From NCBI GenBank assembly GCA_002269645.1, contig NIVC01001503.1, positions 62,001 to 126,000 on the forward strand: a stretch of DNA of 64,000 nt. Reading direction: 5' to 3'. Shown in pieces: positions 25,494-52,755 of the stretch; the first letter of the stretch is position 1; each line of letters opens with the position of its first letter. The stretch is from Macrostomum lignano (taxonomy: Eukaryota). The notes beneath the pieces were generated by a model. It made no database searches, was not told the DNA's origin, and saw nothing but the letters and a program-made list of their open reading frames with translations. The position numbers and the translations under genes were made by a program.

Positions 25494-28400
25494 ATGGGCA
25501 ACTCGATTGGACCCCGGAAGAAGTTGCCGAAGGAGGATATGCAGTTTCTGATGTCAAACACCAACTTTACTAAGAAGCAGATTAAGCAGTGGTATCGTGG
25601 TTTTATTGTGAGTGGAATTTTTCTGCCTTTTTTCCGTAATTGTCAGCTGCATGATCGTTGTAGCATAAATCCATTGAGGGGTACCTTGCACAAGTTATGC
25701 AGCACTCATTATCGAATACATGCTCTGACTTACAGAGGCCAGCTCCCTCAGAGTGAGCTCTGATGCACCCAAATTCTGCAGCTGGCACCCCACCGTACTC
25801 TCAGAATCCTTCAGCTGGCGCCCCATCCCACCGCAGATCCCAGATCCCTTCAGCTGGTGTCTCGCGCCCCACAACACTCCCAGATCCCTTCACCCCATCA
25901 CACTCCAATATCCCTTCAGCTGGCCTCCCTCCACCACACTCCCAGATCCCTTCACCCCATCACACTCCCAGATCCCTTCAGCTGGTGCCCCACCACACTC
26001 CCAGATTCCTTCAGCTGGCGCTCCGCGCCCCAAAACACTCCCAGATTCCTTCAGCTGGCGCTCCGCGCTCCACCACACTCCCAGATCCCTTCAGCTGGCG
26101 TTCCGCGCCCCACCACACTCCCAGATCCCTTCAGCTGGCGCTCCGCGCCCCACCACACTCCCAGATCCCTTCAGCTGGCGCTCCGCGCCCCACCACACTC
26201 CCAGATCCCTTCAGCTGGCGCTCCGCGCCCCACCACACTCCCAGATTCCTTCAGCTGGCGCTCCGCGCCCCACCACACTCCCAGATCCCTTCAGCTGGCG
26301 CTCCGCGCCCCACCACACTCCCAGATCCCTTCAGCTGGCGCTCCGCGCCCCACCACACTCCCAGATCCCTTCAGCTGGCGCTCCGCGCCCCACCACACTC
26401 CCAGATCCCTTCAGCTGGCGCTCCACGCCCACCACACTCCCAGATCCCTTCAGCTGGCGCTCCACGCCCACCACACTCCCAGATCCCTTCAGCTGGCGCT
26501 CCACGCCCACCACACTCCCAGATCCCTTCAGCTGGCGCTCCACGCCCACCACACTCCCAGATCCCTTCAGCTGGCGCCCTAACACACTCCCAGATACTTT
26601 CAGCTGGCGCCCCGCGCCCCACATTCCTTGATCCTTCAGCGCGCGCCCCGCGCCCCACCAAATTCCCAGATTCTTCATCAGGCGCCCCACCACACTCCCA
26701 GATCCCTTCAGCTGGCGCCCGCTACGCCTCTCGGATCTCTCGCAAAGCTTAAGTCGGTAAAAACAAACTGACGGCATCAGCATCCGAACCAGCATTTGGC
26801 TGCAATGCCTTCCCGTCCCAGAGAAACCATCCCGTCCTGACAACCCAGTCAATCTCTTCCGCAGAAACCTTTCTCCTTTTCCCTCCCTCACTCGCTTCCA
26901 ATTTTGCTTTTTTCAGTCGGCACTCGCTTCGCTGGCACTGAGCCCCTCCCCCCATCTCCATGCCGCCTTGCGTGCCCCATTAATTAAGGGTTCGAGTCCT
27001 GAGGTCTGGAGCGAGTGAAAGAGAGAAAAGGCAGGCAGTTGGGCAGGCAAGGGAGGCGATGGATCTGGTAGAGGAGCGCATAGTAGGCAGGAGAGCTCGG
27101 ACTGCTGCGGCTGTGCAGGAGGAAGGGGAAGGCAGGAGGTACTTGAGAGCAGAGCTCCGAGGCTCCGAAGGGGCCACTTGCGGGTTCACGCAAGCGAGAG
27201 GCGGAGAGGCGCAGAGGAGTAAAGGGCAGTAAAGTGGAATGGGTTCACAATTTAGACCAAAAGCTGAAGCTGGGAAGTGATTGACAGAGCAAGTGTAAGT
27301 GAGTGTATTATAGATGCGGCCGGTTGGAGACTGGCTCAGCTGAAGAATACTGCCCGGTGAAGATGGCCCTGTGTTTTGACAGGGCCGGGGCAGTATGGCT
27401 ACCAGGGTGCACTTTTTGGGTGTTTAGTCAGACCAGCTGGATTGACAAACACGGCTGCTCTTTAAGGTACTTCGTTCTCGTGATGGAAAAACTGTCCTCT
27501 TGCCTGGAAGTCTTGATCCCAAACTTCCTCGGTCAATTCTCCCCCTTCTACCTGGTTGATTCTCCCCTCATTCCCGGTTGATTCTCCCCTCATTCCCGGT
27601 GGATTCTCCCCTCTTTCCCGGTTGATTCTCCCCTCATTCCCGGTTGATTCTCCTCTCATTCCCGGTGGATTCTCCCCTCTTTCCCGGTTGATTCTCCCCT
27701 CATTCCCGGTTGATTCTCCTCTCATTCCCGGTGGATTCTCCCCTCATTCCCGGTTGATTCTCCCCTCATTCCCGGTTGATTCTCCCCTCATTCCCGGTTG
27801 ATTCTCCCCTCATTCCCGGTTGATTCTCCCCTCATTCCCGGTTGATTCTCCCCTCATTCCCGGTTGATTCTCCCCTCATTCCCGGTGGATTCTCCCCTCT
27901 TTCCCGGTTGATTCTCCCCTCTTTCCCGGTTGATTCTCCCCTCATTCCCGGTTGATTCTCCCCTCATTCCCGGTTGATTCTCCCCTCATTCCCGGTTGAT
28001 TCTCCCCTCATTCCCGGTTGATTCTCCCCTCTTTCCCGGTGGATTCTCCCATCTTTCCCGGTTGATTCTCCCCTCATTCCCGGTTGATTCTCCCCTCATT
28101 CCCGGTTGATTCTCCCCTCTTTCCCGGTTGATTCTCCCCTCTTTCCCGGTTGATTCTCCTCTCATTCCCGGTTGATTCTCCCCTCTTTCCCGGTTGATTC
28201 TCCCCTCATTCCCGGTTGACTTTCCCCCTTTCCGGTAGATTCTCCCCTCTTTCCCGGTTGATTCTCCCCTCATTCCCGGTTGACTTTCCCTTTATCACGG
28301 TTGAATCTACCCGTTCTCCTTTCTTCTCTGGCAGGCAAACAGGAAACAAAGACATTCTCAACCCCATTTACCCTCAGCGTGACTGTCCATCAGGCCAGCT

Positions 28401-30662
28401 CAGCAAGAAGAAGTTCATCGAGGTGTACTCCGGCTTCTTCCCAGACGGCAATGCCGAGGAGTTCTGCACCCACGTGTTCCGCACATTCGACAAAGACAAC
28501 TCTGGCAAGATTGACTTTAAAGAATTCCTGTTGGCCATCAACATCACTTCTGGCGGCAAGCCCCAGGAGAAGCTGGAGTGGGCCTTCCAGATGTACGACA
28601 TTGACGGCAACGGCAGCATTGAGCGGTCTGAGATGGTCGAGATCATCAAGGTGAGGCTTTTTTAGCACACAGCGCCACAAGGAGAATAGCATGGCGCCAC
28701 AAGAAAAATAGCATGGCGCCACAAGGAGAATAACATGGCGCCACAAAGAAGAATAGCATGGCGCCACAAAGAGAATAGCATGGCGCCACAAGGAGAATAG
28801 CATGAAACCACAAAAAGAATAGCATAGCGCCATAAGAAGAATAGCATGGCGCCACAAGGAGAATAGCATGGCGCCACAAGGAGAATAGCATGGCGCCACA
28901 AAGAAGAATAGCATGGCGCCACAAGGAGTGTAGCACATGGCGCTGAAAAGACCCTACCACAAGCGCCTATCAAGACTCCCGCAAGACAAAATAAGCAATG
29001 AAGCTGTCACTCGGATGCAGGCCAGGCCGCTCACTGCCGCACAGTTTGTACAGATTCCATAGAAACGCTCACCAACAGACCACAAAGCAGTCGGCGCGTG
29101 TTTCTGCATCGCGGGCCAACACAAGCCATAAAAGACTCAGAGAAACAGACTGCTGGGATAATTCGGGAGCTAACGGGGCGCAATCAGTGAGGCATGCCAG
29201 CTGCCTGGCAGGCGGGCTTGAGCAGGTGTTGGGAGTTTAATCCCCGAAAATAATCCGGCCTCTTAGGTACGCGCCGGCTGTCAGAGCTTATGCGGGACTG
29301 GCTGACAGGCTGACTGCAGGCGGGCATCTTTCGAAGCCCAGAGCCAGAAGGTACAAGCGGGGATGAGCAAGGAATGCATGCAAGCAGAATCGATTCGTCA
29401 GACAGCCCCAGAATCCTTCAGTTTCAATCAGCTTCATCGGCTTCCTTTTCTTTCCAATCCAAAATTCGTACCGAGCTCAAGCGGTCCTGGCAACGGGTCT
29501 GAGTACTCGCAGCGTGGGGGATTAGCCGCCTCTTCGCCTTCTCTTTCTCTCTCTCTCTCTCTCTCTCGACGGTGCAGCGAAATCGGCTCAGCTCTGCACA
29601 AGTTGGGATGCAATTAAATTTGAGCACGCCAGAGTCTTTGAGCACGCTAGCTAGTAGAGGCATGCAAGAATGAGGGATTGAGAGAGCAAAAGGTGTCGTA
29701 TGTATGAAGCACTGACATACTGAAAAGCTTGAACAGCAACCATGTGCTCCAGCCATCCCATTGCCATCCCATTGCCATCCCATTGCCATCCCATTGCCAT
29801 CTCATCCCAGCGCTCAGTATCCCAACATCCCAGTGTTCAACATCCCAGTGCTCAGCATCCCAGTGCTCAGCATCCCAGTGCTCAGCATCCCAGTGCTCAG
29901 CATCCCAGTGCTCAGCATCCCAGTGCTCAGCATCCTAGTGCTCAGCATCCCAGTGCTCAGCATCCCAGTGCTCAGCATCCCAGTGCTCAGCATCTCAGTG
30001 CTCAGCATCCCAGTGCTCAGCATCCCAGTGCTCAGCATCCCAGTGCTCAGCATCCCAGTGCTCAGCATCCCAGTGCTCAGCATCCCAGTGCTCAGCATCC
30101 CAGTGCTCAGCATCCCAGTGCTCAGCATCCCAGTGCCCAGCATTCTAGCAATCCCAGTGCCCAGCATTGTAGCAATCCCAGTGCCCAGCATTGTAGCAAT
30201 CCCAGTGCCCAGCATTGTAGCAATCCCAGTGCCCAGCATTCTAGCAATCCCAGTGCTCAGCATCCTAGTATCCCAGTGCTCAGCATCCCAGTGCCCAGCA
30301 TTCTAGCAATCCCAGTGCTCAGCATCCCAGTGCTCAGAATCCCAGTGCTCAGAATCCCAGTGCCCAGCATTCTAGCAATCCCAGTGCCCAGCATCTTACT
30401 GTCCCATGCAGTTGAGTACTGGGGGACTCGAATCCTGCCTACAACCCCGAACCCGAACCGGCAATCTCTGCAGGCAATCTACAGCATGCTGGGCGCAGAC
30501 GAGTCCAACGTAGACATGAGCCCGGAGGCTCGTACCGAGGAGATCTTCGACAAGATGGACGACAACGGCGACGGCGTGTTGTGCCGCGAGGAGTTCATGA
30601 AGGGCTGCATGGCGGACAAGCAGCTCTACTCCATGCTGCTGGCGGACGAGCCCGCCGAGTGA
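25494..30662 (+). CDS. ncs-2: Neuronal calcium sensor (recoverin/NCS family), ncs-2-like, 191 aa. Exons: 25494-25607, 28378-28650, 30474-30662.
   Basis: Three phase-0 exons with GT-AG introns. N-terminal MGNSIG (myristoylation-type Gly2), [23 protein letters not shown] (inactive EF1), EF2 [14 protein letters not shown]3 [14 protein letters not shown]4 [12 protein letters not shown]. Closely resembles C. elegans NCS-2 as I recall it. Confidence 0.95.
25790..26720. repeat. 39/40-bp minisatellite CAGCTGGCGCTCCGCGCCCCACCACACTCCCAGATCCCTT in ncs-2 intron 1
   Basis: Direct inspection. Confidence 0.95.
27552..28290. repeat. 22-bp minisatellite GATTCTCCCCTCATTCCCGGTT in ncs-2 intron 1
   Basis: Direct inspection. 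Confidence 0.95.
28670..28925. repeat. About 22-bp minisatellite GAATAGCATGGCGCCACAAGGA starting about 20 bp after the exon 2 donor
   Basis: Direct inspection. Confidence 0.92.
29750..30395. repeat. 11-bp (CATCCCATTGC) then 15-bp (CATCCCAGTGCTCAG) minisatellite in ncs-2 intron 2
   Basis: Direct inspection; accounts for the QHPSA repeats in the 306-aa ORF. Confidence 0.94.
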
Positions 30663-31045
30663 TCAGCCAGCCGCCAGCCCCTTGTCTCCACGAACTTCGA
30701 GCCCCAGCATCCCCAGCTTCAGCCGGGCTCCAGCTCTGATAAGCTGCTTTTCCCTGCGACGTATCCTAACTGAAATATTTATTTTTACTGTTCTGGATAG
30801 CTGACTGGATATCGACTGAAGCCTGTTTGAATTGCAATTGCCGTCTCCACCCAGTCTGTGTACTTTTTGTGTCCTCTTTGTCTCCATTTCTTCCTTTTAT
30901 TTTAAATCTTTCTCTGAAGGTTTTTCAAACTTCTTATCACTCTGGATTAGTAAATTGGATTTGTCTTCGCAGTTATAGCTATATTCGATAGTACGCAAGA
31001 AAGGATGGGAACGGTTGCGGGTCGTCCCTGTATTCCGTTTTGAGG

Positions 31046-31307
31046 GGGGTTGTAGCCCAGTGGTCAGAGCGTCGGACTCACGACTTGAAGGTCATGGGTT
31101 CGATTCCCGAATCCCACTGGAGCAATTTGTGTCCTTGAGCAAGACACTTAACTCTGCATTGCTTCAGTTTACCCAGCTGTAAAATGGGTGCCAGCATTAG
31201 CTGGGGTAATTGAGGGTGTGTGGCGACCCCCCAGTCCTTGGACTGAACAGCCGTACGCAGCCTTCAGATGCGCCGCGCAATGGCTGCGGCTGAGCTGTCG
31301 GTTGCAC
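31046..31307 (+). mobile_element. tRNA-derived CORE-SINE, copy 3 (most complete)
   Basis: A-box TAGCCCAGTGG, T-arm GGGTTCGATTCCC, CORE-like centre, and the same tail as copy 2. Confidence 0.9.
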
Positions 31308-33090
31308 TTATTAATTATATCATTCCGTTTAGAAAATTCCGTGCCCATTACACAATTCTTGAAATATTCCATTCAGAATTAACCGCACCTATTGATAAGA
31401 CACGCGCGGGCTTTTGGACGAAACAGTAGTCACGTGACTGCTCTCAACCAATGGCGACAGGCACGCGTATATTATTGTGAGGACGACTGTGTGGTTTCCA
31501 AGGTCATGTGCGTCGCTATTGAACGAAGCAGTTGTCACGTGACTGGCTCTCAACCAATAGCGACAGACGTGGGATTGGATCTGTTTGTGTTTACTTGTAA
31601 AGGACGACTGAGTGATTTTCAAGATCAATTCTCATGCTCAGGGTAAACGTCCTAGAGAGTTCACCCTCCTCACCTCCCGAGAATTTACATTGCAATCAGG
31701 GTGATTGATTGGAAATGGCTGAAACTTTCTGGAAGGAAATTCCGAATTGACTGAAGACGGCTTTAGTAAACAGTTTCACTAAAAAAAGCGAGCACGAAGT
31801 CAAATCCGTTTGCTTTTCGCTCTATTTGATTTAAAGTGCATGGCCTACCTACAGTAAGCAGTTGCTTTTATTCGACCAGCAGGTTATGCGACTGCTGTTG
31901 TAAATCACAGCGTCCCATCATCCTCCATCTCACTGTTCTTATCGGCTTCTATAATCAATATTTTACTTATATCCAGCTCTTAACTGACAGTCATAGTTCT
32001 CTCAATATTTATACGGTAAGTGCGTATTACTAAAATACTAAAATGTGGCTAGAAATGTAGATAGAAATTATCTTTCTATTGCTTCTGAAGTGGTTCTGCT
32101 TTGCCCCTGCCTGTCGCACACGGTATGTCCTTCAGCGAGCGTCGCTGAAGGCGCTCTGAAGGATTGCTGACAATTTCTAAGAAAAAATCCAGTGTCTCAT
32201 CTGGAAGAAGGAATAGAACGGATTGCTAATCTACACCATATGGACGTTTGAATCCTTTTAAGCTTGAAGAACAGTCAGTGCTTGATAGTCAAGAGGTAAA
32301 TTTTTAAAAAGAAGTAATTTATTATGAAATTATATAGTATCCATTCTATTCATCTTTGTTCATACACTCGTAAACAAAATAACTGTGCAAACTTTCGCGA
32401 GATTCTTGAATCTGAAGTTTCCTCCCATCGTGTTTATTTTCTATCCCCCCATTTCTGTCATCTGTGAGCCACTCGTACTGTATCAAGGAACTGTCATATT
32501 GAACGCGAGGTCCAGTATAATAGAGCAGTATGGTGATCTGGCCCGTTGGCAGTAGCTCTAGCCTACTCTCAGAAAATGAAGCAAAGAATTCAATACATTC
32601 GTAAGCATTGTTCTTTTTCTCTGTATTTTTCCCTTCTACGCAAAATTTATGCTTTGTAATCAATATTGAAAAATAGGGATTAGCTTGGGAATTAGCGGGC
32701 GGTAGCCCTTTCTATAAAGGCATTAACTATGGCCCTCTGTGTTCCACTTTGTGCTTCTTGTCCTGCCGCACACGCTATCTCAATAATATGCGTTCATTTT
32801 CCTAATATTCTTTCTTGTGTGTTCTAACGATAGAAATTCGGGAAGCCCCAAACAGCCGCTGCGAATCGCGCAGGTATTTTTTAAGCTTCGGGTAGCCCAC
32901 TGTTAATATTCACCCACCTAAACAAAGGGATTTAAATAATAATTAATCAACGATATTAAATAAATTGCTTCTGCAATACAGTTCTCTTCTTTGCACTTTT
33001 ATTTTACTTTAAAGTTTCTGCCGTTTTAAAGTTTCTTTTATAATAGCAAAGCAGGTCCGAAAGAATTTAGAAATCCAGGGTTAGGATAAT

Positions 33091-33483
33091 GCCATCTCCA
33101 TGCATGATGGGGACAGGATCAGAAGCCGCGGTGCCATCTCCATGCATGATGGGGACAGGATCAGAAGCCGCGGTGCCATCTCCATGCATGATGGGGACAG
33201 GATCAGAAGCCGCGGTGCCATCTCCATGCATGATGGGGACAGGATCAGAAGCCGCGGTGCCATCTCCATGCATGATGGGGACAGGATCAGAAGCCGCGGT
33301 GCCATCTCCATGCATGATGGGGACAGGATCAGAAGCCGCGGTGCCATCTCCATGCATGATGGGGACAGGATCAGAAGCCGCGGTGCCATCTCCATGCATG
33401 ATGGGGACAGGATCAGAAGCCGCGGTGCCATCTCCATGCATGATGGGGACAGGATCAGAAGCCGCGGTGCCATCTCCATGCAT
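33091..33483. repeat. 42-bp perfect tandem repeat GCCATCTCCATGCATGATGGGGACAGGATCAGAAGCCGCGGT, about 9.4 copies
   Basis: Identical copies, open in four frames, so not treated as coding. Confidence 0.96.
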
Positions 33484-35425
33484 GCCGGGACTGCTGCGGG
33501 GGAGCCGTAGCCGTTAAATTTTTGCCCACAAGAGTCAATCCTTTAAGATTAGTGTGTATGTACATGTACAACCCATAGCGATGAAGAACTTCAGGGCCGA
33601 TGTGCACCCTGCATGAGCGTTTGCCTGCGTACGTATCAAAGTTGCTTACCTCTCCGCTGTCTGCGAAGGGATTGCTTGCAGTTGTTTCGGTGACAAGAAA
33701 AGACCCTTTTAGTGACAGCCGTTGTGTGTGCAGAAAATTATCTTGCCAATCTTAAGTGATGAAAACTAAAATTTCAGAGTCTGCTAAAACGGTAAAGCAT
33801 TGTTTCATTTAATTTTGTTTATGTATACTATTTTAGGGTTGCGATATTTGTATCTGTACGTTTTCTGCAACTCGCGAATATTTCTCCGTCCTTTTCTCGG
33901 TGGGAATTTCATGATGAGTATCATTTATGTTTATGTGTCTGAATATTCTGGGATGAATTAAAATGATCTGTAGAAAAATAAAACAAAATATCAGTTTGAA
34001 TTTGTTGTCCTGTGTTTTGAATTTCCTCTGTCTTGATTTGCCATCTCTCGACTTGGGTTGTTGACATCTTAGAATTGCAACAAAAAACAAAATGTAGTTC
34101 GGCAGGCTTACTTTGTTACTCAGCACACGCTTAAACAAGGTTCGTTTTCCCCTAGAAATTACAGCGTCGATTCGACAAAAATCCCCAAGGGGATCACCTG
34201 CCGGCATTGATGCAGCTACTCGATCTCCGCTTGATTCTCTAAGCGAATAATCGCATGTACCAGCCAGTAGCTACAGACGGGAGCGGCAGCAACGGAGCAG
34301 CAAGAAAACGAGCGGAATTTGATAATCGCAGTCCCCCAGGGACGGCTGGCTTCGCGGCCAGAGAGGCTGTGGTGTGTGAGATACTCCACTACTCCACTAT
34401 GGCGAGTGCCTAATGGGCTCAAAACAGCATGACCAACGCGGCAATGCGTGGCCGTCAGCTCGCTTTTTATTTATTAGTTAGCGGAGTACCGCGAGATCCG
34501 GGACAGGCTGAGAGTCTGGAAGTCGATGGCGTAATAGTACATTTGTCTATTCAATCCCGTTGGTATTACATGTAGCGCATGGAACGGGTGAGTCGCTAGT
34601 TTCGATGCAAAGTAAATAATCGACGAATAGCAGCTGCCTAGGGCTGATTTCCTTGACATTAGATGGTCACAGAAGCTACGAGTAAAGCTAAGGTCACCAC
34701 TCACGCGTAGTCCTAGCCAAAAAATATGTTTGTATTATTCACTGTAAAAATTAAAGCCATCAATTTAGCCAAGGGTCCGCAAACTCCGGCCTGTGGGCCA
34801 CACGCGACCCGCGAAGCCTCTCTATCCGGCCCTCGGGTCCTTTGAAACTTCACAATGGCAATCCGGCCCACTTACGAGTATATCCGCCCATTTACATGTA
34901 CTGCACTATAGCTTTTACTGTCAAAGTGCGACATATCATATGTAAGACGTCTACAAAAAACACACAGCTGTTCATAAATAGCCACTGTCTGACGGGCGCG
35001 GTGCGTACGAATTCATGAACAAAATCATGTGTTGTTGTTGTCCAATTGTTTTGCATGCCCACGTATACAACTAAGCAATTGGGGACATCAGTTCTGTGTG
35101 CTGCTTCTTAAAGTCTTTTGATCTAAAAAAGTACATTTAACTAGTCAGCCTACAGCAAAACCTCTATTAAATTCTGCGCTGAAATGCATTGACAATAAAA
35201 TAAATATCTGTTTAAGAAGACAGTTTCGTTCCCAATGCTGCCATGGACGTATTGCAGCATTAACACCAGGGTTGTTTACACAGACAAAACTGACTGTGCA
35301 GACCGGTTCGATGGGCTGAGTCTCGAGCGCAGCAGTTTAAGTGAGAGCTGCAGCAGCATTTGAGCTAATTTCCGAATCTGATAGATACGAGGGTACCACG
35401 GTATCACTGGCACCACCCGCAAGCA

Positions 35426-35743
35426 ATGGGCTCGTATTTCGCACTTCTGGCAGTCGTCCTGATGAGCGCCGCTGCCCTGCTAACCAAAGCCGACGCCATC
35501 AGTACTGGCAAGATGCTCTTCGACCTAGCCAATAACGGCCAAAGCCAGGACCATCGCCACCACGACGACCATCATCACGACCATGACAGCCATCACCATG
35601 ACGACCATCACCTGCACCACCATGACGGCCATCACCGCCATGACGACCATCATCACCATCATGACGACCATCACCACCATCATGACGACCATCACCACCA
35701 TCATGACGACGATCACCACCATCATGACGACCATCACCACTAA
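35426..35743 (+). CDS. Small secreted His/Asp-rich protein (105 aa; 40 His and 19 Asp in the C-terminal 64 aa)
   Basis: ATG-to-TAA ORF with a hydrophobic signal peptide ending in A-D-A (24 aa). The repeat stays in frame with mixed CAT/CAC codons. AATAAA at 36030. Confidence 0.82.
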   Translation: MGSYFALLAVVLMSAAALLTKADAISTGKMLFDLANNGQSQDHRHHDDHHHDHDSHHHDDHHLHHHDGHHRHDDHHHHHDDHHHHHDDHHHHHDDDHHHHDDHHH

Positions 35744-36199
35744 CATCATGGTTACTGAATTCTGAAAGCCAGAAACTGAAACGTGAAAGACATATGCATG
35801 TTGAAAAGTTATTCCGCTTCCTCAAATCCACTAGTTATTCCTATAATCTCAACACAACAGAAAACTCTATATTGATCGCACCTTCATCTAAGCATCTTCT
35901 CGCCTTTTACTTCAATCCTAGTGTCTGCTGTTGCATGAATACATCTGTTGTAAACTGCTAATCAGTCCTGAATGTAAAAGCTAACCACTTACTTGCTTTG
36001 ATTCTGCTATCGATGCACTTGAACTAAATAATAAATTGAAGTAAATTGAGAAAATTGAACCAGAGATCAGTAACTTAAATCAAAAAAAAATGCTGTGTCA
36101 GTTCTTGTGTTTAAATAATTATTAAATTGCCATAGTCGCGAGGCCCTGAATACTGTTGATGGAGCTGGGGATAGTGGCAAGGATTAGTTAGTTGACAGA

Positions 36200-36845
36200 A
36201 GTAAAGACCATTGACAGAAGCCTAAAACCAGTTGGAGTCGCCGATGGCACAACAGGTCACTTGGACGCTGATACAGTGCCATGTTGGAATTCGTTTGTCG
36301 CCGATCTTGAAGTCGACGAGTTGTAGACCAGCTTGATTTGGCTATTCGAGCGAGTTTACTGTCAAGCAGAACGGTCTCGATGGGCCGTCCGGTGTTGACA
36401 CGCAGTTTCATGTCACAGTACATCGCCATGATGGCGGAAACCAGCTGATTTGGTACCACCATTGGGAGCGTGAGCCTACATTTTTATCCACCGACGAATA
36501 CATAATCTACGAATCTGTAAATCTGTATGCCTGCGAATTCCCAAGATAACAATCAGGAGCTGCTAGAGCATCCGCGCCTCTTCAATGCCTCAGCGAAAAG
36601 CCAGAATTTGCGCCACTACTCCACGACCGAAGACAGATGCCCTGATACTCCTCAAGGTTATGGTGCGCGGCTTCTGAGGAATTAGCTGCGATGTATTCCG
36701 TGGTGCATTCGTTGGGCGCCTCCTCGCCGATGAGCACGCAGCCGGTTCACTACTCTCTGGCGACCTCACTGGCCACACAGCGGATGCGCAATACCTCGAT
36801 GGGCACCTCGTCCGGACCCAGCGCTTTCCCGCCCGGCGACAATTG
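36200..36845 (-). pseudogene. Degenerate non-LTR retrotransposon reverse-transcriptase fragment (RTE-like)
   Basis: Minus-strand translation across frameshifts and stops gives SPGGKALGPDEVPIEVLRI...IPQKP...EYQGICL...VAQILAFR.GIEEAR and VPNQLVSAIMAMY. These match the motif order at the N-terminus of LINE RT. Confidence 0.72.
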
Positions 36846-36899
36846 TAATTAAGGTTTGTCTCTTCTCATCTCTCTTTCTTTCAGCTCTCTCTTATCACC

Positions 36900-37290
36900 T
36901 CCTCTCCACTCCTCTCCTCTCCTCTCCTCTCCTCTCCTCTCCTCTCCTCTCCTCTCCTCTCCTCTCCTCTCCTCTCCTCTCTCATCTCCTCTCCTCTCCA
37001 CTCCTCTCCTCTCCTCTCCTCTTCCTCTCCTCTCCTCTCCTCTCCTCTACTCGCCTCTCATCTTCTTTCCTCTCCTCTCCTCTCCTCTCCTCTCCTCTCC
37101 TCTCCTCTCCTCTCCTCTCCTCTATTCTCCTCTCCTCTCCTCTCCTCTCCTCTCCTCTATTCTCCTCTCCTCTCCTCTCCTCTATTCTCCTCTCCTCTCC
37201 TCTCCTCTCCTCTCCTCTCCTCTCCTCTCTTCTCTTCTCCTCTCCTCTCCTCTCTTCTCCTCTCCTCTCCTCTCCTCTCTTCTCCTCTCC
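36900..37290. repeat. (CTCCT)n pentanucleotide array
   Basis: Direct inspection. Confidence 0.96.
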
Positions 37291-39919
37291 TCCCTTCTCC
37301 TTCTCCGCTCTCTCCTTTCTCTTATTTCTCTTCTCTATTCCTTCTCCTCCTCACTTCCTCTGGCCCGCAGTCATGCGCTAGGTTCTCTATTTGGCCCTTG
37401 ATGTAAAAAAACTTTGCCAACCCCTGAATTGAGCCTTTCTAGGGAACGTACAAGTTCCACTAAAATGATTTTCAATGTGTTCTAGTCATTTACCTTCAAT
37501 ATACTTTGTCGTCTACGGGCCCCAAACAGCTTTGAAAAATGCATAATCCGCGCCGAGTCATACTGCTCAAGATCGAGCTGCTTGCTCAGGCAGCAGGCCT
37601 CCCTACCAGACAGCACTCGGGTGTGCACTCGAGGCATTTCGTTGACTGCCTGCTGGCTGACTACGCGGAGCTGTCCGGATTCTGCTCAAGGACAACTAAA
37701 AGCAGGACGTTGCATTCGCAAATCGTAAAAATTTCGCTGGAGGCCTTCCCCGATTTTTGCTGCAAAATGCCCTGGCATGCGTTTCGTGCAAGGTTGATTA
37801 TCAAGTTTCTGGAGATCAAATTTTGCGAAAGTATACCATTTCAATAAAAGTGACATCAATTGTGCCTCGCCCATACACAAAACATTAACCTTGTGGCCAA
37901 TCGTGCAGCAGAATCAGTTCAACCGTGATGCATTCAACTTTGGCAAAAGTGACTTTAGTTTTAGTGACAAAAGACCTCGACATAAAGAGAACCGGCAATA
38001 GTACGAACTCCTGCTGAGAACCGCTGACTCACAATAGTGCCTCACAGGTGACAGACATATTTGCCGGATGGTTAATATTTTATGTATGAGTTTGCCACGA
38101 TTGAAGTCACTTTTGCCAAAATCGAGATTGCAATGGTATATTATTGAAGAACTCCAACTTTCAAATATACAGTTGTGTTTTCAAAACGAATTTTGTGTAA
38201 GGATTTGCTAAACAGGGTTTTGCCGTCCTTCTGCTTTTGTTGTGAGTGATTTTGCTTTTAGAGCAGACATGCCCTTGAAATTAAAGTCGGCCCGTACTCA
38301 TTGACCTTTCCCGTTTGAAGCAAAAATTATAGACGAAACAAGGAATGCCTTTTAGCAGTGTCATTTTTCGGTTGAAGTGTAGTATATGTTTTGCAATATA
38401 GACGCGATGCAAAAATGAAATGCAACACGAGTTTCGACAAACTCAATGCTGAAGTTGCTATAAGCCATGCGAGCTGGATGTACGGTGTACGGCCTAATTG
38501 CATTGCATGGAAGCATCAGACTAATTGAGCAGGTCTCAGTTTCTAATCAATTAGAACTAAGGCATCAATTAGACATGAGTAGCTATGTAAGTGTAAGAAT
38601 GCCTGCTTTTAGGTCGTGACATCTAATACCCGATTTGCCATTGCCATTTTATAGCAACTCAACACTTCTCTCCAAACTAAACTAATAAGAAATGGCAATC
38701 GGATCCGGCCTTCACCGGCAAATTCCCTGCAAATTCAATCTGGATAAAAGCTATGGCTATCGATGTCATCAGCAAACGGCGCACTTGAGTCACGAAACAG
38801 CGCTATAAGCTTCCACCCTCTGCTTATGCATGTGGTAGAAATTCATTTTCTCTTGTGTTTGGCTTGCCCAGACATAATCGGCATGCCCTAAGCCGCATTT
38901 GAAATATGGAATACATTATTTTCCTAATCTCTCGTGAGCAGCTTGATCTAGGAATAACAGGAAAAATTGCCCCGTTCCTTATTACTATTCTACCCTAATT
39001 CCCAAGTCAATAGCACCCAAAAAGGCCTGTCTGATTTCTACACAGTTAACCTTGCTCAAAAAGCTTGAAAATCTCGTTCACTTTAGATTTTCGAATTTCC
39101 CCTAGCCGAAGATTTAATCCTCAGCAGCTGAGATTGAATGAAATTTAGGACGGTCACAAACCATTATTGTTAATTTTGCAGGTCTTCAGCTAACTTAGTT
39201 TCCTGCATGGTTCCATCCTTTTTGTAGAATAATACATGCACGGTTCAGCAAATAAACTAGCTAATCAAAGCAAGGAGTAACATTACGAGTAGGTCCTACG
39301 GTCAGTACGGGATTAAAACTGGTTAATAATGAAAAAAGCTTCACGATGGCCAAGTGTTCAATATGAGGCACTTTTTCTTGATGCCCGGCCTGGCCATGCG
39401 TGTTGACGCGTGAACAACTATTAAGTATAGCCGTATAGTCATGCTGACATGTACATGTGCGTGCTGAACAGAATGCATTCATATGGTTCAAGGACATTAC
39501 CCTACTCTCCTTGCATGGATAAATCATGGATGAAGCATCCATGATGCCATGTATGGATCATACCTGAACATGTATGGAGCCATACCTGATCATACATGGT
39601 TCCACGTAAACTTCATCCATGGTTACTTTCCATCCATGTACATTGATGTATGATTTTAAATATAATTTTCCTTACTACACTACTGTTAGTAGAACGCAAT
39701 GTTTGCGTAGGTTCATTTTAAAGCTGAAATTTTCTAAACAAATTCGGCAGCATCTTTAGTGCTGCTGAGAAATATGTTTCCATTCCCTTATAAATCACTT
39801 TCAAAACAAAAAAGTATCAGAACAAATACTTATGCAATTAAATGTAGAAGTAATTGAAAACTCGTATGATGACCATTTCGAGACTTATATTATTAATGAT
39901 AATTAGGCATAATTCATTT

Positions 39920-40608
39920 CAAAGTACTGTAAGAAAAAATAAGACAGCTCAGTCTCAGAGAGCTTTAAAATACAGAATGGACAGAATTTGACGCATTTCA
40001 AGGTACTGTAAGAAAAAATAAGACAGCTCAGAGAGCTTTAAAATACAGAATAGACAGAATTTGACGCATTTCAAGGTACTGTAAGAAAAAATAAAACAGC
40101 TCAGAGAGCTTTAAAATACAGAATAGACAGAATTTGACGCATTTCAAGGTACTGTAAGAAAAAATAAAACAGCTCAGAGAGCTTTAAAATACAGAATAGA
40201 CAGAATTTGACGCATTTCAAGGTACTGTAAGAAAAAATAAAACAGCTCAGAGAGCTTTAAAATACAGAATAGACAGAATTTGACGCATTTCAAGGTACTG
40301 TAAGAAAAATAAAACAGCTCAGAGAGCTTTAAGATACAGAATAGACAGAATTTGACGCATTTCAAGGTACTGTAAGAAAAAATAAAACAGCTCAGAGAGC
40401 TTTAAGATACAGAATAGACAGAATTTGACGCATTTCAAGGTACTGTAAGAAAAAATAAAACAGCTCAGAGAGCTTTAAGATACAGAATAGACAGAATTTG
40501 ACGCATTTCAAGGTACTGTAAGAAAAAATAAAACAGCTCAGAGAGCTTTAAGATACAGAATAGACAGAATTTGACGCATTTCAAGGTACTGTAAGAAAAA
40601 ATAAAACA
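39920..40608. repeat. 73-bp tandem repeat (about 9.4 copies) inside the EnSpm element, downstream of the transposase
   Basis: Period measured at AGGTACT (40001, 40074, 40147). Confidence 0.95.
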
Positions 40609-40938
40609 GTAAATTTTACTGAACAGTCAATAAATAGAATTAGCCGAATTCGGTACGCATTAAGGGCAAGGGCCGACTAATCCTTTACGAAACGAAGTTA
40701 ATGCTGCATTAGTCAATTATTTGCGCACAGAAACTTGGAGATTTTGAATATGGAGAGATCGGACAAAGAGAGGTAACGGTGGGAGTCTGAGAGGGAGGAA
40801 GTTGGGCATCTGGAAAGTTATTCTGATTCCCTGATGGTTTTATCTTGGTCATGGAGCATAATTTTATTTTCTGCCAGACTTTGCAGCATTAATAATAAAA
40901 TAATCGGATCTAAGGTACGGACACATACTCGTACCTTT

Positions 40939-43239
40939 TTAATCATGTTCAAACTCTTTGAACAATGGCACAGCGCAATAACAGTCTTTGCTGAACGATT
41001 CTACTGGAACAGCGATGCAGGGTCGATCGACCTCTGAAAAATTAACTATACGTTCGCGTCTGGCCGATCTGGGCGCATTAGACAGGGATATCAATACAAA
41101 ATTGAATGTCGAAGACTTTTTGAACATGGATTCCAGCAATGCTTTCCAATTAAGTAAATCGATGGGGAAAGTTGCTGCTGGTACTCGTAAAACAAAATCA
41201 AACAGCGAACCAATGGGATCCAAAATTTGCACTCGAATAGTATTAGGCTCGAGGAACTCTGCAATAGTGCAGATTTCGCCGGACTTCAATTGGCAAAGAT
41301 GGTTAGAATTTTTCGACGCACAAGCTGAGCTTGTCGAGAAAAAATGTCCATTAAAATAAGCAAGTGAGTTTCGAAGAATACCATGTGGCCTGGATGGCTC
41401 TAAAGATATAGAGTTAACTGCATCCACTACAATAGAGTCCTTAACACAAGAAAAGTAGTGATGTAGCAACTTTTGAAACAAAAACTTGCGAACAAGCTGT
41501 GGGCCAAATGACACAGTTCCGCATAAGAACTTTTTGAACATGCCAATGGAGCTCTCAAATGCGAACATAGAATAATTAAATACAGGTCCGTACAATTCGT
41601 ACTGTTCAGCCATATGCAAAAGCAGGTGGAAATTAAGGCGGAGTACTTTCGGTCCGAATATTTGCTGAGCATTGGAGATAAAAGCTTTGCATAGCTTTTC
41701 GATATCAGTCTTATTTGATTGGGGGCTATACAACATGTGATAAATAAGAACTAAATTAGTTAACAGCAGTTTCAATGGAAAATGCGAAATTCTCTGCAAA
41801 AACGTAGGAAGAAGAAAGTATAGCGCAAAGTTTTTAAAATGCTTTGCTTTCCAATCTGAAAAGCCTTTAAAATTTGTGTTGATTGTGATGCTAGAAGGAG
41901 TTATAGATTGACGAATACAATTAGATATGAAATCCATGCAATTAGCTGAGCAAAAATACAACTCGCGCCTGTTTGCAGGTAATGACAGCTCTTCTAGTAG
42001 ATACTTGGTGTGGCCTTCGAAAAAGCAGTGTAAACTGTCAATAGGATTGCAGCTGGGAAACGGAACATAGTCTAACAAGCAACTGCGCATCTTTACGCCA
42101 AAAACAGGCCGATTTCGAATTTGTGCGAGCCGACAGTGTTCAAGATGGGAAGATGGGTTTCTCAAAGGAAACAAGTAGCCTTCACCATAGCGGAAGATCC
42201 AGTTTTTACCTTTCTCGGATACTTTAAAGCTCTCACCTGGGTGCAAGCACCTAGGACAGCTAAACGCACCATTGTACTGGTGAATGCAGAAGAGCTTAGC
42301 AAGAGCGGGCAAGTCACAAACAAAGAGTGTGTAATGGACATGAACGGTGTATTCCGAGAATATAAACTGTTTTGGCAAATTGTTCATAATTTCAGACAGA
42401 AAAGACTGGAAATGCGGGACTGCCTTCGATGAAACAAGAGCAATTAGAATTAAATTTGCAAAGCGTTGACGGATGTAAACAGGAAGGTTTAGAAGTTGAG
42501 CCTGAAATGGCCAAAAGCTACTCTGAACAGATTCAAAAAAATTGGCGCCATCAGCTGAGATTAGAAGATGCAAGTGAAGCGACTTGCCAGAAGATAGGCT
42601 TAAGCCTTGTTCTTTAACTATTTTGGAATTCAAAACGTCTGTGTTTTTATCCTTTTGCAATTCTTGCTCATACTGCAGAATAGTTGAAGTGTGGCTGCTT
42701 AAGATAGTCCGCAGCTGTGGAACAATATTGAGCTGTGTCACAGCAACCTTTGACTTTGGGGAATGAACCTGACACTGGCTTTTGCATTCTGGGCAAAAGC
42801 CAAATTCAGACACGTCACTATCATCAAGAGGGCAAGTATCTTGAATCAATGATTTGAGCAACTTGACGCTATTTGGAAGAGCTAGAGAATCTCTACTAAA
42901 AATAGAAAGTAGCTTCAGGAGTCTATCAAGAGCAGCCTCTGAAACTCCGGAAGTAATTGCCCACTGAAAAATCAGAGCCGCCTGCACACTGGGATCTGAG
43001 ATGGAAGCCAAATTCGCTAAGCTATCTGAACTCTCCTCAAGCACAGGCACAGCATTGTTTTCACCAATAAAAGTTTCCACAGCGTCAGGACAGCTGTGCG
43101 AGTGCGTTACACCGGCTTCGCTTGAAATTGAACTCCTATTACTTGTAGAAAAACTATTTGAGGGAGAAGAAATCGCCTGACAAGAGTAGGCTGAGTAATT
43201 AGTAGAAAGAGAGTGCTCAGATTCTGATTTACTAGACAT
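40939..43239 (-). CDS. EnSpm/CACTA-type DDE transposase, 766 aa, intronless and uninterrupted
   Basis: Motifs ISADGANFF (D), FVCDLPA (D), YNGAFSCPRC (CxxC), IDSLHCFFEG, WKAKHFK, NFHLLLH (HxxxH), YGPVFNYSMFAFES (E). Lies between TIRs. Confidence 0.93.
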   Translation of the reverse strand: MSSKSESEHSLSTNYSAYSCQAISSPSNSFSTSNRSSISSEAGVTHSHSCPDAVETFIGENNAVPVLEESSDSLANLASISDPSVQAALIFQWAITSGVSEAALDRLLKLLSIFSRDSLALPNSVKLLKSLIQDTCPLDDSDVSEFGFCPECKSQCQVHSPKSKVAVTQLNIVPQLRTILSSHTSTILQYEQELQKDKNTDVLNSKIVKEQGLSLSSGKSLHLHLLISADGANFFESVQSSFWPFQAQLLNLPVYIRQRFANLILIALVSSKAVPHFQSFLSEIMNNLPKQFIFSEYTVHVHYTLFVCDLPALAKLFCIHQYNGAFSCPRCLHPGESFKVSEKGKNWIFRYGEGYLFPLRNPSSHLEHCRLAQIRNRPVFGVKMRSCLLDYVPFPSCNPIDSLHCFFEGHTKYLLEELSLPANRRELYFCSANCMDFISNCIRQSITPSSITINTNFKGFSDWKAKHFKNFALYFLLPTFLQRISHFPLKLLLTNLVLIYHMLYSPQSNKTDIEKLCKAFISNAQQIFGPKVLRLNFHLLLHMAEQYELYGPVFNYSMFAFESSIGMFKKFLCGTVSFGPQLVRKFLFQKLLHHYFSCVKDSIVVDAVNSISLEPSRPHGILRNSLAYFNGHFFSTSSACASKNSNHLCQLKSGEICTIAEFLEPNTIRVQILDPIGSLFDFVLRVPAATFPIDLLNWKALLESMFKKSSTFNFVLISLSNAPRSARRERIVNFSEVDRPCIAVPVESFSKDCYCAVPLFKEFEHD

Positions 43240-43288
43240 AAAAATAGCAATTCAAATATTCAAAAGTTACTAGAATTTTTTCCGCAAT

Positions 43289-49800: not shown

Positions 49801-50329
49801 ATGTTTCCTTGCATCCACGTGTAATACAGTTACTCTCTTGACGTGTTGTGCAGAAATTGCTTACTGTAATCTTTATAATTGCATAATATACAATGCATTG
49901 AGTAAATTAAATAGCCAATCATTATTGTGCTTCACTCTTCAAGCAGAATAATATTTTAAATAATGTATTACTTTGCTAAGCACTTTGAAAACCGATTTGT
50001 TTATTTTTTACGCAAGCTAGCCGATGCAAAAGCAAATTCTGAAAAATACAACCTAATCGTAATTTAGTCGGATATTAGCGTCACATTCCGATCGGAAAAC
50101 TCCGACTAGAAAACGACCGGATTGCACGAGCCACTTTGCTGACAAATTCCGACCGGACATTCCGATCGGATTCCGACTACCCTTTTTTACTGGGTTATGA
50201 GTTTACTATGTTGTAAAATATTGATTGTCAATTTAACGAACTTCTGATGCTCTTTTTTAAATTAAGTTAAAAACTAAAGTAACAACGCCGCGGCCGTGGG
50301 CCGGGCCGGGCCGTGAATTATCGATACCC
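46894..50329. mobile_element. MITE of about 225 bp (possibly Mutator-type) split by a nested 3.2-kb insertion
   Basis: AAACGGGTATCGGTAATTCACGGCCCGGCCC (about 46898-46928) is the inverted complement of the sequence at about 50303-50333, with one mismatch. GTTTTCACCA is directly repeated at 46884-46893 and 50330-50339. Confidence 0.6.
46986..50194. mobile_element. Non-autonomous CCC...GGG (EnSpm/CMC-type) element, 3209 bp, AT-rich interior
   Basis: Perfect 25-bp TIR CCCAGTAAAAAAGGGTAGTCGGAAT, TT dinucleotide TSD (46984-46985, 50195-50196), and TCGGAA subterminal repeats at both ends. No transposase ORF. Confidence 0.88.
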
Positions 50330-52509: not shown

Positions 52510-52755
52510 GTAAAGTGGGGGTGTGGGGCGGCCAGCCCCCACTAGTAGCCTTATTAATCCCAGGGGTTTGGTGTGGCAAGCCCCCTACTAGCCTTACTAA
52601 TGCCTGGGATGTAAGGGTGGCAAGCCCCCAGTAGTCTTACTAATGCCAGGGGTGTGGGGTGGCAAGCCCCCCCCATTAGCCTTACTAATGCTAGGGGTAT
52701 GGGGGTGGCAAGCCCCCACTAGCCTTACTAATGCCAAAAGTGTGGGGGCGGCAAA
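52510..52755. repeat. Degenerate repeat of about 44 bp (GGGGTGGCAAGCCCCC...TAGCCTTACTAATGCC), 5-6 copies
   Basis: Direct inspection. Confidence 0.8.

What the first reader, a model, noticed from the sequence alone, without database searches (positions are those of the whole stretch)
35426..35743. Unrecognised secreted poly-His/Asp peptide, a candidate metal-binding or biomaterial protein
Seen: a 24-aa signal peptide, a 17-aa spacer, then 64 aa with 40 His and 19 Asp in (H3-5 D2) blocks and no Cys. His is about 49% of the mature peptide, and mixed CAT/CAC codons keep the frame. Known: His-rich secreted proteins chelate Zn/Cu/Ni and act in metal-hardened structures (polychaete jaw, squid beak), antimicrobial defence and heme or metal handling. 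Inference: this is a lineage-specific secreted metal ligand (mucus, rhabdite, adhesive, stylet or eggshell). I recognise no family for it.
Basis: partly seen in the sequence, partly recalled or inferred. Interest (0 to 1): 0.72.

Follow-up and report, generated by a model that had tools for sequence, protein, structure and literature searches.

The report
Unannotated secreted His/Asp peptide, Macrostomum lignano
A flatworm (Macrostomum lignano) locus that GenBank annotates in the wrong reading frame most likely encodes a small secreted peptide that is half histidine; it should bind metals and flip charge with pH, but whether it is made and what it does are untested.

Summary
Window 35426-35743 (+) is a 105-codon ATG ORF with a 24-aa signal-like N-terminus, a 17-aa spacer and 64 aa holding 40 His and 19 Asp, with no Cys.

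The window is Macrostomum lignano, assembly Mlig_3_7, contig NIVC01001503.1. GenBank's RNA-seq-derived annotation places a 60-aa CDS on the same strand over the same repeat, but in the +1 frame (MTAITMTT...). This implies a + strand transcript. A likelihood-based ORF caller probably mis-framed it, because the His frame scores badly.

The non-repetitive N-terminus looks coding:
- GC3 is 0.71, against flank GC of 0.38-0.43.
- Its codon score equals that of true host genes.
- It has a purine at -3 and G at +4, and an A-x-A cleavage site.

Three assembly copies keep the ORF intact with no length change. They are about 99% identical, so this shows no selection.

No homologue, Pfam family or PDB relative exists. 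The best reading is an orphan, disordered, pH-switchable secreted chelator of Zn/Ni/Cu (pI about 6.1), analogous to but not homologous with PfHRP2, Nvjp-1, pHpG peptides and Hpn. Translation, secretion, tissue and role are all unproven. Interest is moderate.

The parts
35426..35743 (+). Complete single-exon ORF of 105 codons plus TAA: the pre-peptide of the His/Asp-rich product
   Evidence: The ORF is intact in all three assembly copies L007, L008 and L009, with one S55G difference in L008.
35420..35429 (+). Start-codon context caagcaATGg, with G at -3 and G at +4. The nearest upstream ATG is at 35311 and opens only a 2-codon uORF.
   Evidence: Sequence; ATG list.
35426..35497 (+). Predicted cleavable signal peptide, 24 aa: n-region MGSY, uncharged h-region FALLAVVLMSAAALL, c-region TKADA with Ala at -3 and -1
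   Evidence: Crude von Heijne-type rule set, passed by 4 of 101 ATG ORFs of at least 60 aa in the window. Synonymous codon score +8.3 bits. SignalP was not available.
35498..35548 (+). 17-aa non-repetitive spacer ISTGKMLFDLANNGQSQ. It has no dibasic site and no N-glycosylation sequon.
   Evidence: Synonymous codon score +4.6 bits.
35549..35740 (+). His/Asp repeat of 64 codons (40 His, 19 Asp). The consensus unit is the 21-nt CAT CAC CAC CAT CAT GAC GAC (HHHHHDD). The 3' units are near-perfect. The 5' units are degenerate and differ by in-frame indels (unit lengths 7, 4, 2, 6, 7, 7, 7, 7, 8, 6 and 3 aa).
   Evidence: TRF periods 21/24/15/42. Codon list. Unit parse. The unit occurs nowhere else in the held DNA.
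35583..35765 (+). The CDS annotated in GenBank for this locus (60 aa, MTAITMTTITC...). It is the +1 frame of the same repeat and is most likely a mis-framed call on a real + strand transcript.
   Evidence: Gene calls in L006 and in L007, L008 and L009 convert to these window coordinates and match the ORF listed. The codon model gives this frame +20.6 bits against -24.9 bits for the whole His ORF.
36030..36035 (+). Candidate poly(A) signal AATAAA, 287 nt after the stop. A second candidate, ATTAAA, is at 36121.
   Evidence: This is a motif match only; use of the site is not shown.

Best explanation
This is a real, lineage-restricted, single-exon gene of Macrostomum lignano. It is transcribed on the + strand and translated from the first AUG (35426) into a 105-aa pre-peptide. 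The 24-aa signal peptide is removed in the ER. This leaves an intrinsically disordered peptide of about 81 aa and 10 kDa that is 49% His and 25% Asp.

The proposed mechanism rests on two properties.
- The peptide would be a pH-switched polyelectrolyte. Calculated charge is about +21 at pH 5, as in an acidic secretory granule, and about -17 at seawater pH 8.1, with pI about 6.1.
- Once the imidazoles are deprotonated, about 40 of them flanked by carboxylates would form many low-selectivity, high-capacity sites for Zn2+, Ni2+, Cu2+ and Co2+.

It would therefore buffer, sequester or deliver metal in a secretion. Alternatively it could hold secreted metalloenzymes inactive, or cross-link a secreted matrix.

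Shown here: the ORF, its signal-like and coding-like N-terminus, and an annotated transcript-derived gene model on the same strand. Inferred: translation in this frame, cleavage, secretion, metal binding and any physiological role. The GenBank 60-aa CDS is the same transcript read in the wrong frame.
For: 1. Transcription. The Mlig_3_7 GenBank annotation comes only from RNA-seq transcripts with TransDecoder CDSs, with non-coding and repeat-overlapping transcripts removed (PMC5730564). It places a + strand CDS at 35583-35765 in all three assembly copies. The longer or better-scoring minus-strand ORFs were not chosen, which suggests the strand was fixed by the RNA data.
2. The His frame is the longest + strand ORF, and it starts at the first AUG after a 2-codon uORF, in a good context.
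3. The N-terminal 41 codons have GC1/2/3 of 0.59/0.42/0.70, like the host MFS and Mpv17 genes, against flank GC of 0.43 and 0.38.
4. Their codon score is 25.7 bits. True-gene windows score 25.4 +/- 8.2, and 0.77% of stop-free null windows reach it. The synonymous-only score is 12.9 bits; true genes score 17.4 +/- 7.0, and 2.8% of the null reaches it.
5. It is the only strongly coding-like + strand segment in its own reading frame between 30.7 and 40.9 kb.
6. The N-terminus has signal-peptide architecture with A-x-A.
7. About five unit-length changes inside the array are all in frame.
8. The array length is identical in three genomic copies, while the CTCCT array 1.2 kb away differs by 19 and 5 nt.
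9. The calculated charge switch.
10. The metal chemistry of comparable His-rich peptides is documented: Nvjp-1 (PMC9465683), pHpG (PMC9472272, PMC12108757) and Hpn (PMC4671568).
Against: - No homologue, paralogue or predicted protein shares even three 5-mers with the N-terminus among 5.8 billion clusters.
- Exhaustive HMMER found one marginal hit that reflects composition only.
- The annotators' pipeline did not select this frame.
- Four of six frames are open through the repeat, and this window is full of minisatellites with spurious long ORFs.
- The three copies are about 99% identical in their flanks, so keeping the ORF intact says nothing about selection.
- His codons in the repeat are CAT 23: CAC 17, whereas host genes in the window use CAT 1: CAC 10. 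The repeat is therefore not codon-optimised.
- The signal n-region has no basic residue.
- The annotation also holds other tiny, doubtful CDSs, such as the 57-aa one at 49495-49668. A gene call therefore proves transcription at most.
- There is no transcript sequence, peptide or expression evidence in hand.
Confidence: 0.5

Rival explanations
1. The ORF is spurious. A transcribed but non-coding locus (a lncRNA or transcriptional noise) contains a CAY/GAC minisatellite that happens to be open, and its upstream extension resembles a signal peptide by chance.
For: - The window has 61 TRF rows, and many repeat-derived ORFs of 150-500 aa are plainly not genes.
- Four of six frames are open across this repeat.
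- There are no homologues anywhere.
- The crude signal rule is passed by about 4% of ORFs, and the synonymous codon score is reached by 2.8% of null windows. Each single feature is therefore only moderately rare.
- His codon usage is unlike that of host genes.
- Slippage in a sequence built from triplet-like units would give in-frame indels without selection.
Against: The rare features coincide at one place: start context, signal shape, GC3 and codon usage, first-AUG position, and an in-frame junction to the repeat. Taken together, these are expected in far fewer than one of the roughly 35 arrays in the window. The GC3 step up from AT-rich flanks begins at the ATG. The array length is stable across three copies while the neighbouring microsatellite varies.
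Confidence: 0.3
2. The peptide is real and secreted, but its main role is not metal handling. It could be a pH-triggered polyelectrolyte or coacervate component. It could be an antimicrobial His-rich peptide. It could also supply nucleophilic His residues for quinone cross-linking of eggshell or other tanned secretions.
For: The evidence for coding is the same as in the best explanation. The charge reversal is extreme, from +21 to -17 between pH 5 and 8.1. From general knowledge, His-rich proteins serve as cross-linking partners in sclerotised materials such as squid beak and insect cuticle, and as pH-dependent antimicrobials such as histatins and clavanins.
Against: Nothing here separates this reading from metal binding. 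A peptide with 40 His will bind transition metals in vitro whatever its role. It has no Tyr/DOPA, Gly or Cys content typical of structural matrix proteins.
Confidence: 0.12
3. The ORF is a fragment of something larger. It could be the first exon or a decayed remnant of a gene with a His-rich ectodomain, such as a LIV-1-type ZIP zinc transporter. Alternatively the annotated 60-aa Thr/Ile/Met-rich frame could be the true product.
For: From general knowledge, LIV-1 ZIP transporters start with a signal peptide followed by His-rich stretches. GenBank annotates the +1 frame, and that frame scores +20.6 bits in a codon model.
Against: - The His frame ends in TAA, and the His/Asp repeat upstream of it contains no GT that could serve as a splice donor.
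- There is no Zip hit or any other Pfam hit.
- There is no strong coding-like segment downstream on the + strand up to the transposon at 39.5 kb.
- The next annotated + strand genes in the insertion-free copies are a 131-aa ORF in L007 and a 111-aa Siva-domain gene in L008 (PF05458), each about 8 kb away.
- The 60-aa frame has no unique N-terminus, starts at an internal ATG behind two His-frame AUGs, and owes its score to Thr/Ile/Met being common in the membrane-protein training set.
Confidence: 0.08

Closest known systems
[quoted passage not shown]
   Same: An N-terminal signal sequence is followed by an almost purely low-complexity array of short His-rich tandem repeats that also carry Asp. 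The protein is released from the cell and its repeats vary in length and evolve fast (PMC11360870). Binding of metal and haem is from general knowledge.
   Different: There is no sequence relationship; the exhaustive HMMER search found nothing. PfHRP2 repeats are Ala/His/Asp of the AHHAHHAAD type, with roughly one third His and much Ala. This peptide has no Ala in its repeat and 62% His. PfHRP2 is about three times longer, has two exons and comes from an apicomplexan parasite.
Nvjp-1, the His-rich jaw protein of the polychaete Nereis virens
   Same: It is a secreted, intrinsically disordered, His-rich animal protein whose behaviour is set by pH-dependent Zn binding to imidazoles (PMC9465683).
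   Different: By general knowledge, Nvjp-1 is a Gly/His-rich structural matrix protein of about 38 kDa. This peptide is about 10 kDa, has a single Gly in its repeat, and pairs His with Asp. No homology was found.
[quoted passage not shown]
   Same: They are small secreted peptides with an acidic residue/His cluster. They are thought to keep secreted Zn-metalloproteinases inactive during storage by chelating metal (PMC9472272, PMC12108757). This is a concrete model for what a His/Asp peptide could do inside a gland.
   Different: pHpG peptides are about 20-30 aa, carry a poly-Gly tail and are excised from a larger multi-product precursor. This peptide is a stand-alone ORF with no poly-Gly and about 40 His. 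No homology was found.
Hpn and Hpn-2 of gastric Helicobacter
   Same: They are very small proteins with a comparable His fraction (about half the residues, by general knowledge). They act as high-capacity Ni stores and buffers, and they are lineage-restricted, recently acquired genes (PMC4671568, PMC8704837).
   Different: They are bacterial and cytoplasmic, have no signal peptide and contain Cys and Gln-rich parts. No homology was found.
Histidine-rich Ca-binding protein (HRC) of sarcoplasmic reticulum; His-rich ectodomains and loops of ZIP/ZnT transporters
   Same: They combine a signal peptide or luminal location with alternating His-rich and acidic stretches that bind divalent cations with high capacity and low affinity (general knowledge).
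   Different: They are large multi-domain proteins with recognisable Pfam domains. None is detected here. There is no ER-retention or membrane domain after the signal peptide.

Membership tests
Protein-coding gene (as opposed to an ORF in non-coding DNA) | Transcript on the same strand covering the ORF | tested here: inconclusive
   A + strand CDS of an RNA-seq-derived annotation overlaps 35583-35765 in three copies (method in PMC5730564). The transcript's 5' end was not available, so whether it includes the ATG at 35426 is unknown.
Protein-coding gene (as opposed to an ORF in non-coding DNA) | Codon usage and third-position composition like host genes, in the non-repetitive part | tested here: met
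   GC3 is 0.71 (6.4% of null windows reach it), against flank GC of 0.38-0.43. The codon score is 25.7 bits (0.77% of the null reaches it) and the synonymous-only score is 12.9 bits (2.8% reaches it). The training set was small (779 codons).
Protein-coding gene (as opposed to an ORF in non-coding DNA) | Conservation of the frame under divergence (orthologues, paralogues, dN/dS) | tested here: inconclusive
   Only three copies, about 99% identical, were found, with one non-synonymous difference. No relatives turned up in the protein databases. Other Macrostomum genomes and transcriptomes could not be searched at the DNA level.
Protein-coding gene (as opposed to an ORF in non-coding DNA) | Peptide or ribosome-footprint evidence | not testable with these tools
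   No proteomic or Ribo-seq data were accessible.
Secretory-pathway protein with a cleavable signal peptide | Short n-region, uncharged h-region of 7-15 residues, c-region with small residues at -3 and -1, and no later TM segment | tested here: met
   The layout is MGSY / FALLAVVLMSAAALL / TKADA|I. A hand-written rule set is passed by 4 of 101 ORFs. The rest of the peptide is strongly hydrophilic, with GRAVY -2.55. SignalP was not available. The n-region lacks a basic residue.
PfHRP2/HRP3 family | Detectable sequence homology and AHH-type Ala/His/Asp repeats | tested here: not met
   The exhaustive phmmer search returned no such hit. The repeat contains no Ala.
Histidine-rich Ca-binding protein, ZIP (LIV-1) transporters and other Pfam-defined His-rich families | Match to the family's Pfam model, or downstream exons encoding the family domain | tested here: not met
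   Pfam gave no family at E <= 0.01 and only sub-threshold noise at E <= 10. The ORF ends in a stop, and no coding-like segment follows downstream.
pHpG venom-gland peptides | A poly-His block followed by a poly-Gly block, excised from a larger precursor | tested here: not met
   The repeat contains one Gly, and the product is a stand-alone 105-aa ORF.
Functional class: His-rich metal-binding peptides (convergent, not a homology family) | Binding of Zn, Ni or Cu by clustered imidazoles | not testable with these tools
   The composition (40 His in 64 aa, flanked by Asp) makes binding in vitro very likely by general coordination chemistry. No measurement was possible.

The most novel reading that the evidence does not exclude
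The peptide is a young, possibly de novo gene built by expansion of a 21-nt coding minisatellite behind a signal peptide. It would serve as a pH-triggered switch in a Macrostomum gland secretion. Packed as a polycation at granule pH, it would become a metal-chelating polyanion on contact with seawater. In that state it could control Zn-dependent curing or release of the temporary adhesive, or keep secreted metalloproteases or seminal-fluid components inactive until discharge. The mis-framing by a likelihood-based ORF caller would also imply a hidden class of extreme-composition secreted peptides that transcriptome-based flatworm annotations systematically miss.
Probability: 0.12. Interest if true: 0.6.

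Novelty: new member of a known kind. Interest (0 to 1): 0.36.

Why it matters
If the peptide is real, it is one of the most His-rich secreted animal peptides described: 49% of the mature chain, with His and Asp together making up 92% of the repeat. It is small enough to synthesise. It occurs in a genetically tractable flatworm where in situ hybridisation, RNAi and transgenesis are routine, so its role in metal handling or in a gland secretion could be tested directly.

There is also a practical lesson. The public annotation has the locus in the wrong frame. The likely cause is that codon-likelihood ORF callers penalise extreme compositions, so proteins of this type are probably under-counted in transcriptome-derived annotations.

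If the ORF is not translated, it is simply one more open minisatellite in a genome that is 15% tandem repeats.

Tried and rejected
- Full-length homology search: 6,943 word-sharing candidates, none at E <= 1e-3.
- Search with the N-terminal 48 aa: no candidate shares three 5-mers.
- Exhaustive phmmer on 1.84 billion representatives: one hit, P0004 at E = 6e-4. It is a 120-aa protein that looks like a bacterial lipoprotein with a His/Asp/Arg patch, and I rejected it as compositional.
- Pfam at E <= 0.01 and at E <= 10: nothing credible.
- PDB sequences at E <= 10: nothing.
- Exact look-ups: the 105-aa product and both reverse-strand ORFs (110 and 74 aa) are not on record in any assembly, Logan included. 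No independent transcript contig was obtained.
- Full-text search for the peptide strings in 8.3 million papers: nothing. Searches for Macrostomum with histidine-rich or secreted found nothing relevant.
- dN/dS between copies is impossible, because there is one difference in 318 nt and the flanks are 99% identical.
- tblastn of the N-terminus and a search for the 21-nt unit in the window and in nine loci found only the three allelic or duplicate copies.
- Rfam found no RNA family at the locus.

I considered and rejected three readings:
- The ZIP-transporter first-exon idea, and the idea that the annotated Thr/Ile/Met frame is the product (see the rival explanations).
- The CAT/CAC mixture as evidence of selection, because it is part of the repeat unit.
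- A repeat period that is a multiple of 3 as evidence of coding, because about a third of the window's arrays have such periods by chance.

Full report
**What is there**

Window 35426-35743 (+) is an ATG-to-TAA ORF of 105 codons. Its translation is MGSYFALLAVVLMSAAALLTKADA / ISTGKMLFDLANNGQSQ / DHRHHDDHHHDHDSHHHDDHHLHHHDGHHRHDDHHHHHDDHHHHHDDHHHHHDDDHHHHDDHHH.
- 40 His and 19 Asp in the last 64 residues, and no Cys.
- His is 40/81 = 49% of the peptide after the proposed cleavage.
- His codons are CAT 23 and CAC 17; Asp codons are GAC 20 and GAT 1.

Tandem Repeats Finder sees the last 190 nt as an array with periods 21/24/15/42 and the consensus CAT CAC CAC CAT CAT GAC GAC. The four 3' units are nearly perfect. 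The 5' units are degenerate.

**Where it comes from**

The MFS-transporter ORF at 61414-62217 is 99% identical to the Macrostomum lignano protein BOX15_Mlig023460g1. Exact look-ups place the window on contig NIVC01001503.1 of assembly GCA_002269645.1 (Mlig_3_7). The window is a typical piece of that genome, with 61 TRF rows and many minisatellite-derived ORFs of 150-500 aa that are obviously not genes. An open frame through a repeat therefore means little here. Four of the six frames are open across this particular repeat.

**The locus is already annotated, in another frame**

Gene calls returned with the flanks of the neighbouring transposase (L006) include a 60-aa product. Its coordinates convert to window 35583-35765 (+). 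That is the +1 frame of the same repeat: MTAITMTTITCTT...NIMVTEF. An exact look-up of that product found it in three places in the assembly, L007, L008 and L009, where L009 is the window's own contig.

The Mlig_3_7 GenBank annotation was built only from RNA-seq-derived transcripts (StringTie, TACO and TBONE). TransDecoder called the CDSs, and non-coding and repeat-overlapping transcripts were removed (PMC5730564). So a + strand transcript over the repeat is implied, though I could not see its ends.

My crude codon model, trained on 779 codons from host genes in the window, gives these scores:

| ORF | Score (bits) |
|---|---|
| Whole His-frame ORF | -24.9 |
| - its N-terminus | +25.7 |
| - its repeat | -50.6 |
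| 60-aa Thr/Ile/Met frame | +20.6 |
| Reverse-strand 74-aa ORF | +59 |

A likelihood-based caller restricted to the + strand would therefore prefer the 60-aa frame. This explains the annotation, by inference. It also suggests that the strand was fixed by the RNA data, because the better-scoring reverse ORF was not chosen.

**Is the His frame coding?**

The informative part is the non-repetitive 41-codon N-terminus.
- **Start context.** The ATG has G at -3 and G at +4. The nearest upstream ATG, at 35311, opens only a 2-codon uORF.
- **Signal-peptide shape.** The first 24 residues consist of a short n-region, a 15-residue uncharged h-region and TKADA with Ala at -3 and -1. A hand-written rule set for this shape is passed by 4 of 101 ATG ORFs of at least 60 aa in the window.
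- **Composition.** GC1/2/3 is 0.59/0.42/0.70. The host MFS ORFs have 0.55/0.43/0.75 and 0.53/0.47/0.73, and Mpv17 has 0.51/0.44/0.65. The flanks have GC of 0.43 and 0.38.
- **Codon score.** It is 25.7 bits. In-frame windows of true genes average 25.4 +/- 8.2 bits. The score is reached by 0.77% of stop-free non-genic windows and by 0.12% of all windows.
- **Synonymous-only score.** The training genes are membrane proteins and a signal peptide is hydrophobic, so I repeated the test using synonymous codon choice alone. The score is 12.9 bits. The null is -8.7 +/- 11.2 bits, and 2.8% of it reaches the observed score. True genes score 17.4 +/- 7.0 bits.
- **Isolation.** On the + strand between 30.7 and 40.9 kb, the only other segment that scores as high (35538-35750, 27.2 bits) is the +1 frame of the same repeat.

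Each feature is only moderately rare. Their coincidence at the head of one of about 35 arrays is not expected by chance.

**Copies**

All three assembly copies keep the ORF intact. L008 differs by one non-synonymous change, A35588G, giving S55G. Flanking DNA is about 99% identical, with about 15 differences in 3 kb, so this carries no information on purifying selection.

It is negative within this small sample. The His array has the same length in all three copies, while the CTCCT microsatellite 1.2 kb downstream differs by 19 nt and 5 nt.

Inside the array the unit lengths are 7, 4, 2, 6, 7, 7, 7, 7, 8, 6 and 3 aa, so at least five indels are all in frame. That is suggestive only, because a sequence built from CAY and GAC triplets will tend to slip in threes anyway.

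**Points against coding**

- There is no relative of any kind. The full-length search found none at E <= 1e-3. No protein among 5.8 billion clusters shares three 5-mers with the N-terminal 48 aa. Exhaustive HMMER on 1.84 billion representatives gave one marginal hit that reflects composition only. Pfam and PDB gave nothing.
- The exact product and the reverse-strand ORFs are not recorded in any assembly.
- His codons in the repeat (CAT 23: CAC 17) differ from host usage (CAT 1: CAC 10), although that host sample is only 11 codons.
- The annotation also contains other tiny, doubtful CDSs, such as the 57-aa one at 49495-49668.

**Most likely mechanism**

I put about 0.6-0.7 on the ORF being translated and secreted. 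I put 0.5 on the full statement that it is a secreted His/Asp peptide working through its metal and proton chemistry.

After signal cleavage the product would be 81 aa and 10.07 kDa, with GRAVY -2.55, and it is surely disordered. The calculated net charge runs from about +21 at pH 5 to about -17 at pH 8.1, with pI about 6.1. Such a peptide would be a polycation in an acidic granule. On release into seawater it would become a polyanion carrying about 40 neutral imidazoles next to carboxylates. That makes it a high-capacity, low-selectivity ligand for Zn, Ni, Cu and Co.

Documented analogues work in this way:
- Nvjp-1 binds Zn in a pH-dependent manner (PMC9465683).
- Viper pHpG peptides are thought to hold secreted metalloproteinases inactive during storage by chelation (PMC9472272, PMC12108757).
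- Hpn stores and buffers Ni (PMC4671568).
- PfHRP2 shares the overall design of a signal sequence followed by His/Asp-containing tandem repeats (PMC11360870).

None of these is homologous to the present peptide. The resemblance is convergent. I could not address which gland or process is involved.

**Rivals**

- **A chance ORF in a transcribed minisatellite (0.3).** This fits the genomic background and the lack of homologues. It must explain away the coincidence of features at the N-terminus.
- **A real peptide with a non-metal role (0.12).** It could be a polyelectrolyte, an antimicrobial or a cross-linking substrate.
- **A fragment of a larger gene, or the annotated frame is the true product (0.08).** This is disfavoured for several reasons:
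  - The stop codon is not preceded by any GT donor within the His/Asp repeat.
  - There is no Pfam domain.
  - The downstream + strand sequence lacks coding potential.
  - The next + strand gene calls in the insertion-free copies (a 131-aa ORF in L007 and a Siva-domain gene in L008) lie about 8 kb away.

**Verdict**

It belongs functionally, not by descent, to the known kind of secreted His-rich metal-binding peptides. It is a modestly interesting lead that is cheap to test in a tractable model. It is not a new kind of system.

Noticed in passing
window 39500-50194: This stretch of about 10.7 kb is absent from the otherwise collinear copy L008. The window blocks 38031-39499 and 50195-54900 map to L008 12521-13991 and 14597-19296. 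The stretch holds a 73-bp tandem array (39915-40609), an intact 766-aa DUF1258/Transposase_21-like ORF (40939-43239, minus strand) and AT-rich DNA. The identical 766-aa product is encoded on 8 contigs of the assembly, so this looks like a recently active transposon and an insertion polymorphism between duplicated regions.
   Followed up: partly
window 35583-35765 (+) and 49495-49668 (+): GenBank carries very short CDSs here (60 aa and 57 aa). They look like by-products of likelihood-based ORF calling on RNA-seq transcripts. The 57-aa one lies inside the transposon insertion, and its cluster mate is 'hypothetical protein BOX15_Mlig024698g1, partial'. This suggests both systematic mis-framing and over-calling of small ORFs in this annotation.
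   Followed up: partly
window 31044-31119 (+): A tRNA-Val (anticodon CAC) gene lies about 400 nt downstream of the EF-hand gene's stop. ARAGORN and Rfam (33.1 bits) agree on it.
   Followed up: no
window 27874-32049 versus 32107-39499, compared with L008: Divergence between the duplicated copies is mosaic. Identity to L008 is about 94% across the EF-hand gene region, but 98-99.7% from 32.1 kb onward. L007 is 98-99% identical throughout. Possible causes are gene conversion or recombination between homeologous or duplicated regions, or assembly collapse.
   Followed up: no
window 29742-30662 (+): A 306-aa ORF fuses an intronic 15/24-bp minisatellite (QHPSA and IPVLS repeats) in frame with the genuine last EF-hand exon of the annotated 191-aa calcium-binding protein. 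It is a clear local example of a repeat-derived ORF that is not coding.
   Followed up: partly
window 13981-19368: A 5.4-kb array holds 159 copies of a 34-bp unit at 94% identity. Together with about 35 other arrays it makes the window unusually dense in minisatellites. Array periods are multiples of 3 in only about a third of cases, as expected by chance.
   Followed up: no
window 6303 (+, 91 aa) and 51247 (+, 65 aa): Two other ATG ORFs pass the same crude signal-peptide rule. Their N-termini are [23 protein letters not shown]... and MKSIIAHWPLALFIAILAIVLQRG.... I did not examine them further. They may be chance hits and are part of the null estimate.
   Followed up: no
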